This document shows, one piece after another, positions 11,975-37,830 of a stretch of DNA of 64,000 nucleotides. The notes under the pieces are model-generated. The model was not told the origin of the DNA. It saw only the letters and a list, made by a program, of their open reading frames with translations, and did no database searches. The number at the start of each line of letters is the position of its first letter. Position 1 is the stretch's first letter. Origin of the DNA: Phallusia mammillata (taxonomy: Eukaryota); assembly GCA_965637545.1 (NCBI GenBank), contig OZ281496.1, positions 29,388,001-29,452,000 on the forward strand, given 5' to 3'. The translations under genes were made by a program, and so were the position numbers.

Positions 11975-13981
11975 TAGTCTAAAATTATAAACACTGAAAA
12001 AACATCATCTGTAAACATAAGGATATAAAATATTACACAAACTAGTATTCAACCTGATTTTTTCAAACAAACTGTAAAATACTGAAATATCTTAGTCACT
12101 CACTAAACTTTCGTGATGAAAACCTAACAGTTTACTACAAAAAACATGATTGTTTTAAATTTTAACAAGACATGAACATTAAAAGTTTAAAACCTGTGGC
12201 CTTTGCTTTTGCAATATATAATATCACTAATAATTGTCCAATGTCCATACTAAACCCAAAACTTTTTTCAGCAAATTAAAGACTTCAAAAAGCTCTCTGC
12301 AGTCTGCATCTTAACAACCCTCGTCCCTCACAGAGTATCTAAAATACCTTAGTTTGAGCAGGAACTTCCTATTACTACGGCTTTTTTATTAATACAGTGT
12401 GTATTCTGTGATTGAATAGTGAATACAAAGCACTCTTGTGGTTATTGAGTATGAATAACTTCTTGTGGGTTTGACGTCACATAGAAAACGTCACTTGTGC
12501 TGTGACGACAGGACGAGCGTGTAATTTTCAGGTTGGAAGTTTGTTTTAGAACATAACGTGGTATTGTATTAATTGCAGTTTTATCGTCGTCATAGCTGCA
12601 AATGAAACTGAAAGCCCCCCTAATCTGCAATGTGTATAATTTTCGTTTTGTGCTTTCGGCTTTTGAACAAAAAATTAAAAGGCGATTTTTCGCTTTGTTT
12701 CAATTTTTCCATGATTATCAGTTCCTGGTGACTGAACGTTACAAATTAGATATTCTAATCAACGTTTCGTTCAAAAAACTACAAAAGGTCGTAACGAAAC
12801 GAACAGCAACAGGCTAGAAAAGCGCCCTATAGTGGTACGACTATTACATACTTTTGCACCACTTGTATTGCCAAAGATAAAATTATCGTGGATTTTCATG
12901 AACAAACACAAAAACTATGGCACACGCCTACAAATAAGGCAAGAATGGATGACTTCGACTCAATCAAAGCAGTACATTTCAAAATCACGTGCAACAACTG
13001 TTCCAAATTCCAAAAATTCAAACGATTATCAGTTTTAGTAAATATAGTTGCAACCGAACGAAGTATTTGAAAAACAAATGATTATGATTGTTAAGTCAGG
13101 ATGGCGAATGCAATTGAATTTATCAGACATTGCACACAATGAATGTACTAACAGACAAATTAACTGAAAAGACAATCTGTTAAAACGACATTGTTTGATT
13201 TGAGGGCTTTGAGTGCCGGTGGAACGCTGGTTTAATGATTCAACAACCCGACATTTACATTCTCACACTAAGTTCCCGTTCGAAACAAAATTCTCAGTCG
13301 TCGTATGGTCGGCGTCGGCATACCCACGAAGTCACGAGCTCACGTTATAGCCGAGTACCAGCAAAAGACTCGGGGGACGCCCCAGGTACAGATGTTAGGT
13401 AGCGGAACTGGAAGTTACCCTAGCGTCGGGCGTTGCCTAATTCTCTGAAATCTTTAGCAGCTGATGAATTAGGAGAGAAATCAGTATTGACTGCTGTTAA
13501 AAAAGGTTCGCGCTTTCTTTACCGACAACGCAGCTTCCATGAAATGTTTTTGTGATGAAATAAAGTTGTAAACGAGGCAAAAATCAATTAATCGTGACCT
13601 TGCGTTTACCTCAGGGGCCATTTAATATAATATCACTCGAGTAAATCACATTAAAAAAGACCTAACGTCAGCTGATCGTCAAACTGACAACAGGTCTCGC
13701 TCTCTCCATTGCTTGGCGTGTCAGGACTTGTCTGGCGTCGGGAGAATAAAAGAAAGAAAAAAGCAGAGGAGCGCCAAGAGGAGTGTGGAGCAAAAACAGT
13801 CCGAGGGGAAGTACCACCACGTGAATATTCTTTTTTCCTTCTATTTTGGTTGGGTTTATATGGTTACGCAAGGGAGAGGCTTGCTTTAGTCTACGTGTTA
13901 TTCACAGCCAGCGGAGCTCTGTCATTTGAACACCGAGTATTTTTACTGCTTTTGCGGCAATTAAGATTTCACAGAGTTATA

Positions 13982-30500: not shown

Positions 30501-32187
30501 GAGTTTGACGACCAATCGCAGGCATGTCCATATTTGGAGAGCCGTTTTGGCGGATTATTTTTTCGCATTTCGCGGGAAAACAGGTTACAATGTGATTACG
30601 ACACGGTCATATGTTGTTTCGTATTCGATTACGTCACCATTTCTTTCGCACGAGATCTCTGGGTGCTCTGGATTTGTAACAGCTACAATTAAGGCCGACG
30701 CCCAAGTATGCGGCAAAATTGGAAGGAACATTTTTATGGAAAACAAAACCACGAAACTTACAGTGGTTGAATGTAGCCTTAGCGAAACTATTACATTAGG
30801 ACTAGTATTTATGATTAATCAAATAAAGAAGCTGTGTTTATTTAAGAGTTTTAACACCAAAATGTCTTACTAAAATGAAGTGCTCATACACTATTCTTAA
30901 TACAGAATAACCGCCAAACTAAAATGCCTAATTATTATGCGATACATCCACCAGTTTTTTTCCCTATTACTGCCATATGATTTGGATCAAACCTAAATAA
31001 TTTGTGTTCAAATATTACTTGGACCAGTTTAAGTGATACTTAACAAACTCGCCTATGACGTAAAAATCGAACAATAAAAAACGTCGTGACCAGACAACAG
31101 ATGCGACAGTTTTTCTTGCCGTGCGAAGTAATTAAGCATTACGTAAGCCCCAACCTTGCGATTCTGACAACTTAGTGGCGCAATGATTTCGACGTTTCAC
31201 AAACTTGGTGGAGAGTTTTATGGGTGCAATAAAACTGTTGTCCCATATTGACAGTGTACACATTGCGTAAAATGTGGTATTGTTAACCCCTTTAAGGTTA
31301 AAATTTCATTATTTCGGCATATTTTACGAAAAGATCTTGCAACCCACGGCTTTACAAATGCCACTAAAGTATTTTGGGTTAGGTATAGAAGCATAAATTA
31401 AGTGCCAGTTGCTGAAACGCCTGAATAATAAAGCATGCCGCTTTTTACGTCTATTTAGGCCGTCCGTAACTTATGAAAAGGTCCGTGCATATCCAAAGTG
31501 CCCTCAGTTTGGGTTATTTAGTAATCTGTAGCATTTTGTTATATCTGTTGATAAGGATTACCTATTTGCAAAATAACACAGGTAAGGTACAAATATTTAC
31601 ACTTTATTTCAACTTTTTTTGCGATATGTTACGAGCTTCAAGGGGCATTGCAATACAAATTACAAAGGGCGGGGAAAAAGACACGAACGAAAACAAGGCT
31701 ATTTTTTGTAGCAGGATTTTCGTTTGATATTTTTCACAATTTTTTTTCAATTTTTTTGCAATGACACAGGGCTGTACACACAACGCAAAAACACTCGGAA
31801 CTTTTCAACTCTCAAACATTTCCTAAAAAGGACCAACGTCACTGAAACTATGGCAACAGAAGAATGCTGCCGATATAAAACAAGAGGGTAGAAAATTTAG
31901 GCCAGTAGAAAAAAGAATTTAACTAAACCAGTAAATTAAAACATTCAAAGAATCCAATAAATAATGACAATTTCAGCTATGCAAACCAACTTTCTATCTT
32001 ATGTTGTAAGACGTTAAAAATGCAAATAGTGAAAACTATTGCATTTCATACAATGGTCTGTAAAAGTAAAGACAGTTTGACTATATTCATATTAAAAGTC
32101 AAACATAATAATCAATCCATACAACAGAGGAACTTTATGAAAACATCACACATCTCCAAAAGGTCGGTCCACAAATTAATTGGACAG

Positions 32188-33783
32188 TCATTTTTTGCTT
32201 TTTCCAGTCATCTCAGTCAGGAGTGTAGCTCTCGTCTCCTTTACTTCTTGCTCCAGTTCAACAATTTTCTTGCGCAAGAGCTCGTTATCATCAGTCAGCT
32301 CCTGCATCTTCTCCGCTGCCTCATCGCGCTGCACTTTGCGCTTCTTTCGCGACTCCCGACAAGCTTCGTTGTTCTTACTCCTCTTCCTGATGTAGGAGCT
32401 TGTTCTTTTCATCTTCGGGGTTTCAATGCTCGCTGAAGTCGCTGGCTCTTCTTTAGTCAAATCTACGACGACATTTTGAGGCACTTCTGGTTGCATGTCA
32501 CCAATTTCAATGGTTGAAAGGTCACTTTGGTCGACCACAATTTCCACAGCCTGTAAAGATAACAAATTATTATTTAGGTATCAAAGCTATAACCCTAATG
32601 TAGTCAAACAATTGCTGCTGCTCTTACATGTGGTAGGACTGGAATCTGCTGAAGTACGGATTCCAAGGTGAGGCTGTCCTCTCTAACCATCTCTTGTTGG
32701 ACCACAGAAGTTGTGTAGACATCAGTGACAACCATATTCATTTGGCATTCGACATCACTCACTGTGGTCTGTGTGCAGACACTTTCATCTGATGTTGTGT
32801 TGACTTGGTTATTGTTGTTGTTGTCATTGGTTTCTGCAGTGTCTGTTAAAGATTAGTTTGTTAAATCTCGGAAGTGGGTTAAAAATAAGATATTTATAAA
32901 GCACAAATGGTTGCGTACCTGAACAGTGTGTGATGACTGGTGCATCCGTGAAGTATGGCTCCAAGTTGACGGGATAAGAGCTGTACAAAGTTGCATCCTC
33001 TGAAGCGGCTCTGAGCCGGTTGTTAAGCGGAGGAGAGGGAACAAATTCACCTCCCCAGGACACATTACGATGCCGTGCCAAAGAGCTACTGGGAAGCTCT
33101 GCATGTGTGAAGGAAGGAGAAGGATGAGCAATGTGTGCATCATCATCCAAGAAGGGAGTTGGGATGGGCGACTCTTCATGGTATTCTTCTTCATTGTCAT
33201 TTGGGATTGGACCCAAAACTTCAAGTACCATGCTCAATGATGACTGCCTTTCCATCTCGGGGATGGAGTGGTATGCACTCTTTTGCTTCAAGAGTTCTGG
33301 GAATTCTTGCATGGAATGTTTAGGGGTTGAAGGATTAGGTGAAGTCAAAGGATAGTCACAGCTATCAAGCTGGCTGTATGGGGATTGTGCCCACAAGCTG
33401 TTGGTGCTGGGCGCTGGAGAGCATTTGTTTTCAATGTCTCTGCAATAGTCAGTTTCAGCGTAACCAACATTGTCATTGGACACAAGAGCGTCAAGAGTTT
33501 CCATGTCATTTGTCCGGTTCCAGGTCATGTTATAGGCATCCGGGATTTCTGTAATGTTTAAAAGAGCCAACATTAAAACCATGTCTACTATAACCAGAGT
33601 CTTATGTTTGGAATGTTTTTTACCTGACAGGTCGCTACCCACAGAAATAGGTAGGTCTGGGAAGCACTCCCCCAAAGTCACCTCTGGCTGGGGGCTCCCG
33701 GGGCTCTGGGGCAATTGCCCCGCCCCTGGGTTTTCCTCTCTGAGCAATGTTTCTGTCTGCATGATGCAAGTCGAACTGAGCAT
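32188..33783 (-). CDS. Orphan bZIP transcription factor B (C/EBP superfamily, CHOP/Xrp1-like), ~455 aa
   Basis: Exons (minus) 33624-33783, 32919-33548, 32628-32842, 32188-32550, phases 1/1/0, 1368 nt. Acidic S/P-rich N-terminus; bZIP YIRKRSKNNEACRESRKKRK..MQELTDDNELLRKKIVELEQEVKETRATLLTEM. Start is ATG 33783 or the in-frame ATG 33762. Confidence 0.88.
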
Positions 33784-34049
33784 TGGATTGTGAAGCAACC
33801 ATTCTGAAATAGGCAAATATAAGTTTTAATACACATTCTGCAATGATATAATCTTACAATTAGACTAAGTCCCCAATTAGAAACAAAACGTTTGACGTAC
33901 CTCACAAAAGCAAGTTCTATACACACATTCATCCACAAATGCAATAAGTTATACTGTTTTTAATGCACAAGGACTCAGGTCCCAACAAGTTAATTCACAA
34001 AAGCAACAAAACATGTACCAGCGCTGCGAGGAACGCGATCGTTGATCAT
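33635..34049 (-). other. Spliced 5' leader of bZIP-B with uORFs (uORF1 11 aa; overlapping out-of-frame uORF2 66 aa; 3-aa mini-uORF)
   Basis: Exon 1 ends at 34019 (donor GTACAT), exon 2 is 33901-33953, exon 3 starts at 33803. uORF1 ATG 34049 = MINDRVPRSAV*. uORF2 ATG 33932 (second in-frame ATG at 33802) stops at 33635-33637, past the main ATG. Mini-uORF ATG TGT GTA TAG at 33917-33928. Confidence 0.65.
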
Positions 34050-34166
34050 GTTCTGTGCTTTGTTTTCTTTTTGCAACAATAACAAACTTTCACGCGGATT
34101 GCTCTCTGAAGGTCTGCTCGGCTTAGCGACTGTCAAGTTGTGGGGCTAGCGCGGCGCGAACGTTTA

Positions 34167-34311
34167 TATTTATAGCCTGGCTTCGAGAGGGTAAAAACGT
34201 TTCTCAAACGTTTCGGGGCACTTTTTTCGCGTCACTTCTCTCGTTTCTAAGCACGCCCGGACATGTCCGAGCACGTTTGGCAAGGAAAAAGCATCATGTG
34301 ATGTGACGTCA
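34167..34311 (-). promoter_or_regulatory. bZIP-B proximal promoter: TATA box, triple p53-family half-site array, CRE
   Basis: TATAAATA on the minus strand at 34167-34174; AAGCACGCCC GGACATGTCC GAGCACGTTT at 34249-34278 (three abutting RRRCWWGYYY-like decamers, the central one perfect); TGACGTCA at 34304-34311. Confidence 0.65.
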
Positions 34312-36009
34312 AAAGCGACAACGCGACGCTTTCGGTACAATAACAACCCGGGAAGACCCCAGCCGGTAGAGCTGGCGCGTTGCTCACATTCCTAACAACG
34401 AATGCAATGACTTAATACCACGAAATTTGCACCCAAATATGCCAATCAGTTAACCTTAGCCGGTCGCAGTAAGTAAGTTTACCCGTCTTAAAGCGGTTAA
34501 CAATGGCAGAAATTTCGGGACAGTGCGAAGGACACCGCCCACGCCACTCCCGCCGGCGTCGCCGGGTGCAGTTGCACCAAAACAAGCCGCGATTGCGCAA
34601 CATGCGGCCTCATGGGAGCAATACTTGACCGGCGAAATAACTGCGGCTAAGGTGAAGCGAGCGACAATAACAAACTACCGGTAAAAACCGGACTTCTCCA
34701 GTTTGGCTGGACTTGAATTTTAGCGCTCAGGAAAGCGATTACGGGTGTCAACAATCACTTGGTTATTTATATGTCATGTTAACGCCTTATTACAGTTTTG
34801 TCATTGCATTTGCGTCCAACATACCGACAAAAATCTTTACACAAAATGGAAACGTTATGAATTTTAAGTTGAAAAACTTGAAACAGATTATTTATAACAC
34901 CAAAAACCTAAGATTGCGTTTGTTCTTAACACTAAACCCATTTTACCCCATGCAAACCATCACAAATCTCAAAACAGCTCACAGCAGCCATACAAGTTCA
35001 AACAATGCACAAATTTAGTAAAAAAAAACAACCTTTCACTTGCTCACCTGACAAACTTAGCCATTTGGCTTTTTGAGTTTTCTCGAAATGACCCCTTGGG
35101 GTTTCGGAACACTCCAGCAACGCCTAAGCGCGCTGATAGCGATTCATCTTTTTTGTGGGATTATAAAGTTGACAAAAACAGGACTTAGGAACTTGTAAAG
35201 ATTGAGAGTTCATAAAACAGTGCCAACCCATTGAAGTAAACAAGGAATCTGAGTGTAAAATCGTGCTTGACCAGTCGCAAATAGAAGGTGTTGTAGTAAT
35301 AATTGTCTCAGTAATTTGAAAATCAGAAGCAGCAAATGGGTGTGAAGAAGCCTCAGAAATCATCGGAAAAATCTCAAAATCAAGCAAATATACTGATGAC
35401 CAGGCGACCAGCTATTAGGACAGCCTCCCAGAAATTCTTTTCTCCAAATGGTGGTTTGCAAAAATTGTTAAGACCCAAGGTTGACAACAAAATTAACTAC
35501 TGATAACCAGCTTTAATACAGATATTTATTTGCTTTTTTTGTGTAATCTATCAATGCAAAATATACACTTCAATAAACACCAATTGTCCAACCAAAGCTA
35601 TTTTCATTATATATCTCCATTTCATAAAGTCTAAAGGTAATCTAGCTTACCCTAACACAAGTCAAGTTATTGGATGCTTTCTGTTATGTATCTATTTCTA
35701 TATTAACACAAACTGATTATATTTCTTTAGACGCAACTTGCCAGTAAAAGCTATTGTTTAAACACTGACAAGCGACAACCACAGAAAAACCACGTTTAAA
35801 ATTGTACAAGGGAAAACTTACAGGCTAATCAACTACCTTGTACAATCATTAGACCTGGTAGCCTTCACAACTTAACCAGCTCATAAACAATGGCATTCTA
35901 TAACCAACTTAAACTACATGTAGTTCCTGTACTGCTCGAAATACCCATGCCCAGACTGAACTGATGACGCCACGCTAAACGCTCAGTGACTATATGCCTG
36001 CGAAACGGA

Positions 36010-36039: not shown

Positions 36040-37830
36040 CGGGCATCACGGGACTAGCCAAGGTGACTTTGCGCGTGCTGAGCAGCTTTAAAGACACGTC
36101 TTAAAACGGAATTTTACAAGTAACACTAATTTTTTTCTCCCGGGTTTGCTAATAACCAATTTCTTGGGTTTGCAATGCTGCGGTTAAGAGTATAAATTTC
36201 CAATCCAATTTAACATTTACGCGCCTGGGGGCGGGTGATCGCATTTTTGCAATTTACAGCTTACTTCATTGGTTTTTATAAGACGAGAGGTTACGTCCAA
36301 AAATATTTACAGCTAAGCGTAAAACGTATCAAGCACGCAACACAACAGAGACCCATTTTATACATTAACGTTAATACGTAAAGTGACATTACAGATAAAC
36401 TTTTTTTAATAAATCTACTGTTTCCACTCATGCCAGGTCATGGTTGTTTCGCTAATTTTCGATAAACAAGTATCGTTAGATAACGACAGCATTCATGATA
36501 AGCGCAGCCCAAATTTTGCAAGTCATTCCTGTGCGAGCCGGCCGCCATCTTGAAAACAAGCTATCGTTTCTCCCAGCGAAAAAAAAAGCACCGCTTAGCA
36601 ACCAGCAGGTAAAACTGAAAACCACATTTCACGAGCTGTGCATTGGAGAAAGTCAGAATAAGAAAAGAAATTCCTTCCACAACTACAAATTATTGGTCCA
36701 ATAGTTTTTCTAGTGGGACAATAACCAGAAAAACACACAAATATTTTCTTAGTACATCGTTTCACATTCACAAACCACACATTCCACATGCAAAGGGCAG
36801 GTTTCACACATTTTATGCAAAGCAAAATATGCTCTGTGGATTTTCAAAAATGTCATCGAAAATTGCAATCAAAGGGCTGTTTTAAATGAGTCGTCCATTG
36901 TGACGAATTACAGGATAACCTAGGATTTCGTCAACTTTTCATAGTTACCTGAATTGTGAAAAGTTTCGACAGACTCAAAATTGGAAATGTTGATCAAAGA
37001 CGAATTCGATGTAGGAAAAATTTCGCTCTCTGTAAAATGGTCAGATTGAGCAAAAAGTCCCACCAACTTACCGCCATGACACACAATTATATTGTTAAAA
37101 GTTGTTTTTTAAACTTACCACCGTTTTTAAGGTTGGAGAAAATTGTTTTCTTTCCTGTACGCCTTGTTGAATCCAAGTTTCACGCAGAAATTCCGACTTT
37201 TAGCTTCACTCTTCAACAGCAAGCAAGGCCACTAACTCTAATTGAGCTAGCAACCAGTAAAAACAAAACTTATTTCGATCTCGACGCTTGTCGAAGACCG
37301 ATACTAACGAAAACGCTTGTAAGTTATCCAGCGATTCTAATGCACTTGCCTTTAGACAAGAATATAGCGCGCTCTTTCCGTAGCTTGTTGTAAGACTTCT
37401 GTCAAATGTCGATGTGATATTGCGCCACGGTTGCGCAACAGTTTTAGCCTGTCACACGGGTGTTCCCCGGCATTTTCCGGCGTCGCCATTGGATGCCGTA
37501 ATCACGTGGGTCGACCGGCCTATAGGAAGTGAGCAAACTGAAACTCCCCCAAGCGTAACTCGGTCAACACGGTCGTGAGGGCAACCGATCTTTACACAGC
37601 CAGACATAAGTTCTAAATTCGGATATTCCGTGCAATGAAAATTGACGCCGCATTTGATGACGAAATACGATATATGCTGTCCTCACAATACAGGCAAACA
37701 TGGATGTGGTCTACTTATCATTAGCTCTTCAATAGTACATCAAAAATGCCCAAACCTTCTTAGTATTTTCGATTTTTACTCAATACATTTAATCAATTCA
37801 AAACACTTCAACTATACCAACAGTTTAACC

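What the first reader, a model, noticed from the sequence alone, without database searches (positions are those of the whole stretch)
34249..34278. Triple p53/p63-type response element just upstream of the bZIP-B TATA box
Seen: three abutting decamers AAGCACGCCC GGACATGTCC GAGCACGTTT, 75-105 bp upstream of the TATA box. The centre is a perfect RRRCATGYYY; the flanks have CACG/CGTG cores. Established: zero-spacer RRRCWWGYYY arrays are p53-family sites, CGTG cores are tolerated by p63/p73, and Xrp1 was discovered as a p53-dependent irradiation-induced gene. Inference: bZIP-B is a direct p53-family target, linking DNA-damage signalling to an ISR-gated bZIP.
Basis: partly seen in the sequence, partly recalled or inferred. 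Interest (0 to 1): 0.7.

Follow-up and report, generated by a model that had tools for sequence, protein, structure and literature searches.

The report
Candidate p53-type site inside bZIP intron
A 30-letter stretch that looks like a triple binding site for the p53 family really exists in a sea-squirt stress-type bZIP gene and is unique in its genome, but it lies inside the first intron of the main mRNAs, not at their promoter, and p53 binding remains untested.

Summary
The letters are as described. Window 34249-34278 holds three abutting decamers. The centre, GGACATGTCC, is a perfect p53 half-site. Each flank keeps C4 and G7 but has a CACG/CGTG core. A TATAAATA motif lies 75 nt away on the gene's strand.

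The array is rare. It is the only non-satellite triple seen among the listed sites in the 240-Mb Phallusia mammillata genome, against 0.09 expected under the loosest pattern. Single and double consensus sites occur at chance frequency.

The genome encodes a p53/p73 gene with intact DNA-contact residues. Published work confirms that p63, p73 and fly p53 tolerate CGTG cores.

Spliced transcript contigs from three studies join exon 2 to leader exons at 35048-35549 or ending at 36949. The "TATA exon" junction appears in one run at about 6% of the depth, on a contig that runs unbroken through the TATA motif and the array. So the array sits in intron 1, in a CpG-rich block with a CRE. This may be an MDM2-P2-like internal promoter or an enhancer.

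One natural variant hits the array and preserves the pattern. The paralogue has a weaker look-alike.

Verdict: a plausible, unproven p53-family site (about 0.4).

The parts
34249..34258 (.). Decamer 1, AAGCACGCCC (minus strand GGGCGTGCTT). It fits RRRC..GYYY with a CACG/CGTG core.
34259..34268 (.). Decamer 2, GGACATGTCC. A perfect palindromic p53 half-site and the centre of the 12-nt palindrome CGGACATGTCCG.
   Evidence: PMC2807882
34269..34278 (.). Decamer 3, GAGCACGTTT (minus strand AAACGTGCTC). It carries the natural variant T>C at 34276, which keeps a pyrimidine at that position.
34163..34174 (-). TATA-like motif TATAAATATAAA. Its use as a core promoter is not shown.
34304..34311 (.). Perfect CRE palindrome TGACGTCA, 26 nt from the array. 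The E-box/M-box-like TCATGTGA sits beside it at 34294-34301.
   Evidence: read from the sequence
34195..34214 (+). Tandem AAACGTTTC repeat with an 11-nt period, between the array and the TATA motif. One unit is absent in another individual.
34000..34900 (.). CpG-rich block (CpG o/e 1.26-1.45) that holds the array, the CRE and the TATA motif. It is flanked by a CpG-poor gene body and by leader exon 1b.
33901..34145 (-). Putative minor leader exon '1c'. The donor at 33901 is joined to 33803. The 5' end is inferred from the TATA motif only.
   Evidence: joint 33803/33901, depth 23.5 in one run
33804..35047 (-). Intron 1 of the major mRNA form. It contains the array.
   Evidence: joint 33803/35048, depth 387 and 24.5 in two runs
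35048..35549 (-). Leader exon 1b of the major mRNA form. It carries an ~80-codon upstream ORF.
36949..37320 (-). Distal alternative leader exon 1a. The 5' end is approximate.
32098..33803 (-). Exons 2-5 of the bZIP gene (protein P0001, 455 aa). The bZIP domain is in the last exon.
13714..13743 (+). Weaker look-alike in the 5' region of the paralogue bZIP-A: TGGCGTGTCA GGACTTGTCT GGCGTC... CGTG sits at the same offset and in the same gene-sense orientation.

Best explanation
The 30-nt array is a composite p53-family response element. It has one optimal half-site flanked at zero spacing by two p63/p73-type CGTG-core half-sites, so four of its six quarter-sites are canonical. It sits in a CpG-rich, CRE- and TATA-containing block inside intron 1 of a Phallusia mammillata C/EBP-like bZIP gene.

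Inferred mechanism: after DNA damage, tetramers of the tunicate p53/p73-a protein occupy overlapping pairs of the three half-sites. They then raise transcription of the bZIP gene in one of two ways. They may fire an internal, normally quiet TATA promoter whose exon '1c' splices to the common exon 2, as at MDM2 P2. Or they may act as an intronic enhancer on the upstream promoters.

Shown here: the sequence, its rarity, its intronic position, the presence of the trans-factor, and the existence of the 33901>33803 splice. Inferred: binding, inducibility and the internal transcription start.
For: - The array is unique in the genome. A Markov model expects 0.09 relaxed or 0.001 strict triples.
- C4 and G7 are intact in all three decamers.
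- GGACATGTCC is among the tightest p53 half-sites. p63, p73 and Dmp53 accept C(A/G)(T/A)G, and p63 prefers RRRCGTGYYY in two studies.
- A p53/p73 locus on C3 keeps S241, R248, R273, C277 and R280.
- The CpG o/e of 1.3-1.45 marks a likely unmethylated regulatory block.
- The donor at 33901 is used.
- The only variant inside the array keeps the consensus.
- The paralogue has CGTG-N3-GGACTTGTCT-GG in the same orientation. Those two sites are the only matches to that pattern in 240 Mb.
- There is a fly precedent, p53 to Xrp1.
Against: - There is no binding, induction or conservation evidence. Orthologous DNA was unobtainable.
- Perfect p53 double sites occur at exactly chance frequency in this genome, so the consensus alone carries no sign of selection.
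- Both flanks break the classical CWWG core.
- The flanks are also direct repeats (AGCACG...GG, 20-nt period) in a stretch with other small duplications. The three decamers may therefore not be independent events.
- One SNP in 30 nt is no sign of constraint.
- The paralogue similarity is not significant under a-priori definitions: 15/30 identities and a Smith-Waterman score at shuffle level.
- No transcript start was seen at the TATA motif.
Confidence: 0.4

Rival explanations
1. Chance composite. A lone p53-like half-site happens to sit between two copies of a locally duplicated AGCACG word, in CpG-rich regulatory or merely unmethylated DNA. p53/p73 plays no role at this gene.
For: - Single and double consensus sites are at chance level.
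- The flanks are a 20-nt-period direct repeat. The neighbourhood holds other small tandem or dispersed repeats, and one is polymorphic.
- The pattern was defined after seeing the site, in a very large scan.
- The block is the most polymorphic part of the stretch laid: 7 SNPs per 900 nt plus an 11-nt indel.
Against: - Even the loosest triple pattern is expected only 0.09 times per genome, and the strict one 0.001 times.
- The array lies next to a TATA motif and a CRE in the 5' part of a stress-type bZIP gene.
- The SNP inside the array preserves the pattern.
Confidence: 0.35
2. A real cis-element read by other factors. One candidate is two same-orientation RCGTG(CT) sites for bHLH-PAS/ARNT-type factors (HIF- or AhR-like), two helical turns apart and flanking a palindrome bound by an unknown dimer. 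They would work together with the adjacent CRE and E-box.
For: - On the gene-sense strand the flanks read ACGTGCT and GCGTGCT, exactly 20 nt apart.
- The natural variant turns ACGTG into GCGTG and so keeps RCGTG.
- The paralogue keeps GCGTG at the same offset.
- TGACGTCA and TCATGTGA lie within 45 nt.
Against: - RCGTGCT is not enriched in the window: 9 seen, 11 expected.
- No known factor other than the p53 family is recalled for GGACATGTCC. This rests on my own knowledge and was not tested.
- The purine and pyrimidine triplets around each core fit p53 and are not required by bHLH-PAS sites.
Confidence: 0.15

Closest known systems
Canonical p53 response element (two RRRCWWGYYY decamers, 0-13 bp spacer) and clustered or 'three half-site' variants
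   Same: Zero-spacer decamers with C4 and G7 invariant. The central decamer is the optimal GGACATGTCC.
   Different: Only one decamer meets the CWWG core rule. The two flanks have CACG/CGTG. No binding has been shown.
p63/p73-type element RRRC(A/G)(T/A)GYYY (Osada et al., as cited in PMC2807882 and PMC9091270)
   Same: Both flanks are exact RRRCGTGYYY on the gene-sense strand. Tunicate p53/p73 proteins are closer to the ancestral p63/p73 type.
   Different: The specificity of the tunicate proteins has not been measured. In Brandt et al. A at position 5 still bound better than G.
MDM2 P2 internal promoter (p53 sites plus TATA in intron 1 giving an alternative first exon). Recalled from established knowledge, not tested here.
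   Same: Intronic position. The array lies upstream of a TATA motif. An alternative leader exon is spliced to the common exon 2.
   Different: An internal transcription start is not demonstrated. The minor junction sits on a contig continuous with the upstream intron.
Drosophila p53 to Xrp1 axis
   Same: A p53-family factor upstream of a fast-evolving C/EBP-like bZIP with stress functions.
   Different: Orthology of this tunicate gene to Xrp1 (or to CHOP) is not established. No induction data exist.

Membership tests
p53-family response element | At least two decamers matching RRRCWWGYYY, spacer 0-13 bp (classical definition) | tested here: not met
   Only 34259-68 is a full match. Each flank has one core mismatch, CACG. 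As a 20-mer, each pair has 1 mismatch in 20, within the range commonly accepted for functional sites (my own knowledge).
p53-family response element | p63/p73/Dmp53-type decamers RRRC(A/G)(T/A)GYYY with invariant C4 and G7 | tested here: met
   All three decamers fit on the minus strand. Literature basis.
p53-family response element | More frequent or better placed than chance | tested here: inconclusive
   The triple is unique, with 0.001-0.09 expected. But the pattern was chosen post hoc, the flanks are direct repeats, and double sites are at chance level genome-wide.
p53-family response element | Cognate factor present with DNA-contact residues | tested here: met
   PF00870 gives hits at two loci. 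The C3 copy keeps R248, R273, C277 and R280. The C1 intronless copy has His at R273 and Thr at R283.
p53-family response element | Conserved in orthologous loci | not tested
The metagenome scan and an ORF-based search were empty.
p53-family response element | Bound by p53-family protein; gene induced in a p53-dependent way | not testable with these tools
   Needs EMSA, ChIP, a reporter, or irradiation RNA-seq.
Promoter-proximal element of the working core promoter | Transcripts start about 30 nt downstream of the TATA motif | tested here: inconclusive
   Contigs cannot show starts. The 33901>33803 junction exists at about 6% depth in one run, on a contig unbroken from 33901 to 35077.
Promoter-proximal element of the working core promoter | It serves the main mRNA forms | tested here: not met
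   The main junctions into exon 2 come from 35048 (two runs) and 36949 (two runs).

The most novel reading that the evidence does not exclude
Both members of an ancient tunicate pair of C/EBP-like stress bZIP genes keep a p53/p73 element (CGTG-N3-GGACWTGTCY-GG, gene-sense). In bZIP-B it drives a damage-inducible internal TATA promoter. Its transcripts keep the conserved exon-2 uORF gate but skip the long uORF of the constitutive leader. That would be a chordate counterpart of the fly p53 to Xrp1 axis, combining transcriptional (p53) and translational (ISR) control.
Probability: 0.15. Interest if true: 0.6.

Novelty: new member of a known kind. Interest (0 to 1): 0.35.

Why it matters
No p53-family target element has, to my knowledge, been defined in tunicates; three literature searches found none. 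If it works, this one would tie DNA-damage signalling to a uORF-gated C/EBP-like bZIP, in parallel with fly p53 to Xrp1. It would also give a compact 30-nt element for reporter tests in electroporated ascidian embryos. If it does not work, it is a useful warning: even a genome-unique consensus array is not evidence of function where plain consensus sites occur at chance frequency.

Tried and rejected
- Orthologous DNA. A JGI metagenome scan with the protein gave nothing. A protein search with the chance ORF that spans the array (34170-34346) gave nothing.
- Repeat or transposon origin. The promoter block and leader exon 1b are single-copy in the genome.
- RNA gene or structure. There were no Rfam hits in 33700-35700.
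- Paralogue promoter homology. The Smith-Waterman score equals the shuffle level. The look-alike ranks high only with a core I chose post hoc.
- Metal-response element, E2F and NF-I readings of the flanks were considered from memory. They were dropped because key positions mismatch.
- SL trans-splicing at exon 2 as a way to hide a TATA-driven start. The junction depths already add up to the exon-2 depth in run X5.
- Spliced model. The protein was searched exon by exon, by reference only.

Full report
**What is there.** Window 34249-34278 reads AAGCACGCCC GGACATGTCC GAGCACGTTT. On the minus strand, which is the sense strand of the neighbouring gene, it reads AAACGTGCTC GGACATGTCC GGGCGTGCTT. 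The centre is a perfect RRRCATGYYY and the core of the 12-nt palindrome CGGACATGTCCG. Each flank keeps the R and Y triplets and C4/G7, but has CACG/CGTG in place of CWWG. Counted as quarter-sites, four of six are canonical RRRCA and two are RRRCG. Within 45 nt on the other side lie a perfect CRE (TGACGTCA, 34304-34311) and TCATGTGA (34294-34301). Between the array and the TATA motif is an 11-nt tandem repeat of AAACGTTTC.

**The gene.** The minus-strand gene encodes a 455-aa bZIP_2 protein identical to UniProt A0A6F9DFC5 of Phallusia mammillata. That identifies the organism. Earlier notes of this scan describe it as one of a tail-to-tail pair of C/EBP-like orphan bZIP genes with a conserved exon-2 uORF.

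**Is it more than chance?** The answer depends on the level.
- Single RRRCWWGYYY decamers: 22 in the window, against 19 expected.
- Perfect zero-spacer double sites in the 240-Mb genome: 20, against 18 in the reversed control and 20.3 from a first-order Markov model. The consensus as such is therefore under no visible selection here.
- Pairs of a CRYG-core decamer with a CATG-core decamer: 6 per strand, against 4.4 expected.
- Three abutting RRRCNNGYYY: 64 sites. Of those listed, all but this one and one other are 10-bp satellites, (AAACCGGTTT)n and (GGGCAGGTCT)n. The Markov expectation is 0.09, or 0.29 with the local CpG-rich composition.
- The CRYG-CATG-CRYG triple is unique in the genome, with 0.001-0.002 expected.

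Two caveats apply. The pattern was defined after seeing the site. And the flanks are a direct repeat (AGCACG-YYY-GG, 20-nt period) in a stretch that has other small duplications, so the three decamers may not be independent events.

**Where it sits in the gene.** I laid Logan contigs of three RNA-type runs from three studies, and of one DNA run from another individual, on 32000-36000. The RNA contigs are spliced, with GT..AG ends on the minus strand, so they are transcripts.
- Exon 2 begins at 33803.
- In X5 (depth 387 of 398) and X12 (24.5 of 24.5) exon 2 is joined to a donor at 35048. That leader exon runs to about 35549 in both runs.
- In X14, and in a minor X5 contig, exon 2 is joined to a distal exon ending at 36949 (loose end located; sequence).
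That is about 6% of the exon-2 depth.
- That junction sits on a contig running unbroken from 33901 to 35077, through the TATA motif and the array.

The array therefore lies in the 1,244-nt intron 1 of the main mRNA. It is 446 nt upstream of exon 2 and about 1.27 kb downstream of the main transcript start. Contigs cannot show starts, so a weak or stress-only start at the TATA motif is neither shown nor excluded.

**Context that speaks for a regulatory block.** CpG observed/expected is 1.26-1.45 across 34000-34900. It is 0.25-0.6 in the gene body and 0.13-0.39 around leader exon 1b. The block is single-copy and has no Rfam match.

**Natural variation.** The DNA contig of another individual (X4) differs at 15 letters over 3 kb. 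Seven SNPs and an 11-nt deletion (one AAACGTTTC unit) fall in the CpG-rich block. One SNP, 34276 T>C, lies in decamer 3. It keeps a pyrimidine (p53 model), keeps RCGTG (bHLH-PAS model), and makes the two flanks more alike. One individual cannot show constraint or its absence.

**The trans-factor.** PF00870 finds two loci in the genome. The multi-exon C3 copy keeps the contact residues...FMCLSSCVGGINRRP... and ...VRICSCPGRDR.... The intronless C1 copy has His at the R273 position and Thr at R283. Brandt et al. report that GGACATGTCC is among the tightest p53 half-sites. They also report that p63, p73 and Dmp53 accept C(A/G)(T/A)G, although A at position 5 still binds best (PMC2807882). A review cites two studies in which p63 prefers RRRCGTGYYY, and it describes the two Ciona p53/p73 proteins (PMC9091270). 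Xrp1 is the primary p53 target in flies (PMC13588501).

**Paralogue.** About 260 nt upstream of the bZIP-A ATG, and 115-145 nt upstream of a TTTATATGG motif, lies TGGCGTGTCA GGACTTGTCT GGCGTC. CGTG-N3-GGACWTGTCY-GG matches only these two places in 240 Mb, each on its gene's sense strand. But I derived that pattern from the two sites. With a-priori queries the match is weak: 15/30 identities, and not among the top window hits for the 20-mers. Overall promoter similarity is at shuffle level. I treat it as a lead only.

**Conservation.** It could not be tested. Two work-arounds found nothing.

**Conclusion.** The promoter anatomy is not as drawn. The p53 reading is the best single explanation for the letters (about 0.4) but is unproven. 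Chance plus local duplication (about 0.35) and other factors reading RCGTG repeats (about 0.15) remain open. It is a candidate new member of a known kind of element, of moderate interest until binding, induction or conservation is shown.

Noticed in passing
window 35124-35363 (minus), inside leader exon 1b: The main leader exon carries an ATG-started upstream ORF of about 80 codons (listed as an 87-aa TTG ORF). This comes on top of the conserved exon-2 uORF. A transcript starting at the internal TATA motif would skip it.
   Followed up: no
G000:C1:28581084-28581650 (L002:1261-2349, minus): An intronless p53-family copy (362-aa ORF) has His at the position of human R273 and Thr at R283. These are changes at DNA-backbone contact residues that the multi-exon C3 copy does not share.
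   Followed up: partly
genome-wide, e.g. G000:C5:7347166, C7:24535198, C8:6426561; C8:2928-4701, C5:4124, C6:3636: Two 10-bp-period satellites dominate every periodic RRRC..GYYY search. They are (AAACCGGTTT)n in many clusters and (GGGCAGGTCT)n near contig ends, possibly subtelomeric.
   Followed up: no
window 34195-34214: The 11-nt tandem duplication of AAACGTTTC is polymorphic: one unit is missing in run X4. Run X5 carries an 8-nt deletion at 34094.
   Followed up: partly
window 34294-34311: A perfect CRE, TGACGTCA, sits two nucleotides from an M-box/E-box-like TCATGTGA. A half-CRE, GTGACGCG, lies at 34229-34236 (minus). These are candidate ATF/CREB and MiT/TFE inputs to the same block.
   Followed up: no
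window 35200-35900 versus 34000-34900: The RNA-supported leader exon 1b and its upstream flank are strongly CpG-depleted (o/e 0.13-0.39), while the intronic block is CpG-rich. This is the reverse of what a simple '5' end is unmethylated' picture predicts.
   Followed up: no
window 33549-33623 (minus): A 75-nt intron is in frame and free of stop codons, so the genomic ORF reads through it. This accounts for the 91% identity to the UniProt protein.
   Followed up: yes
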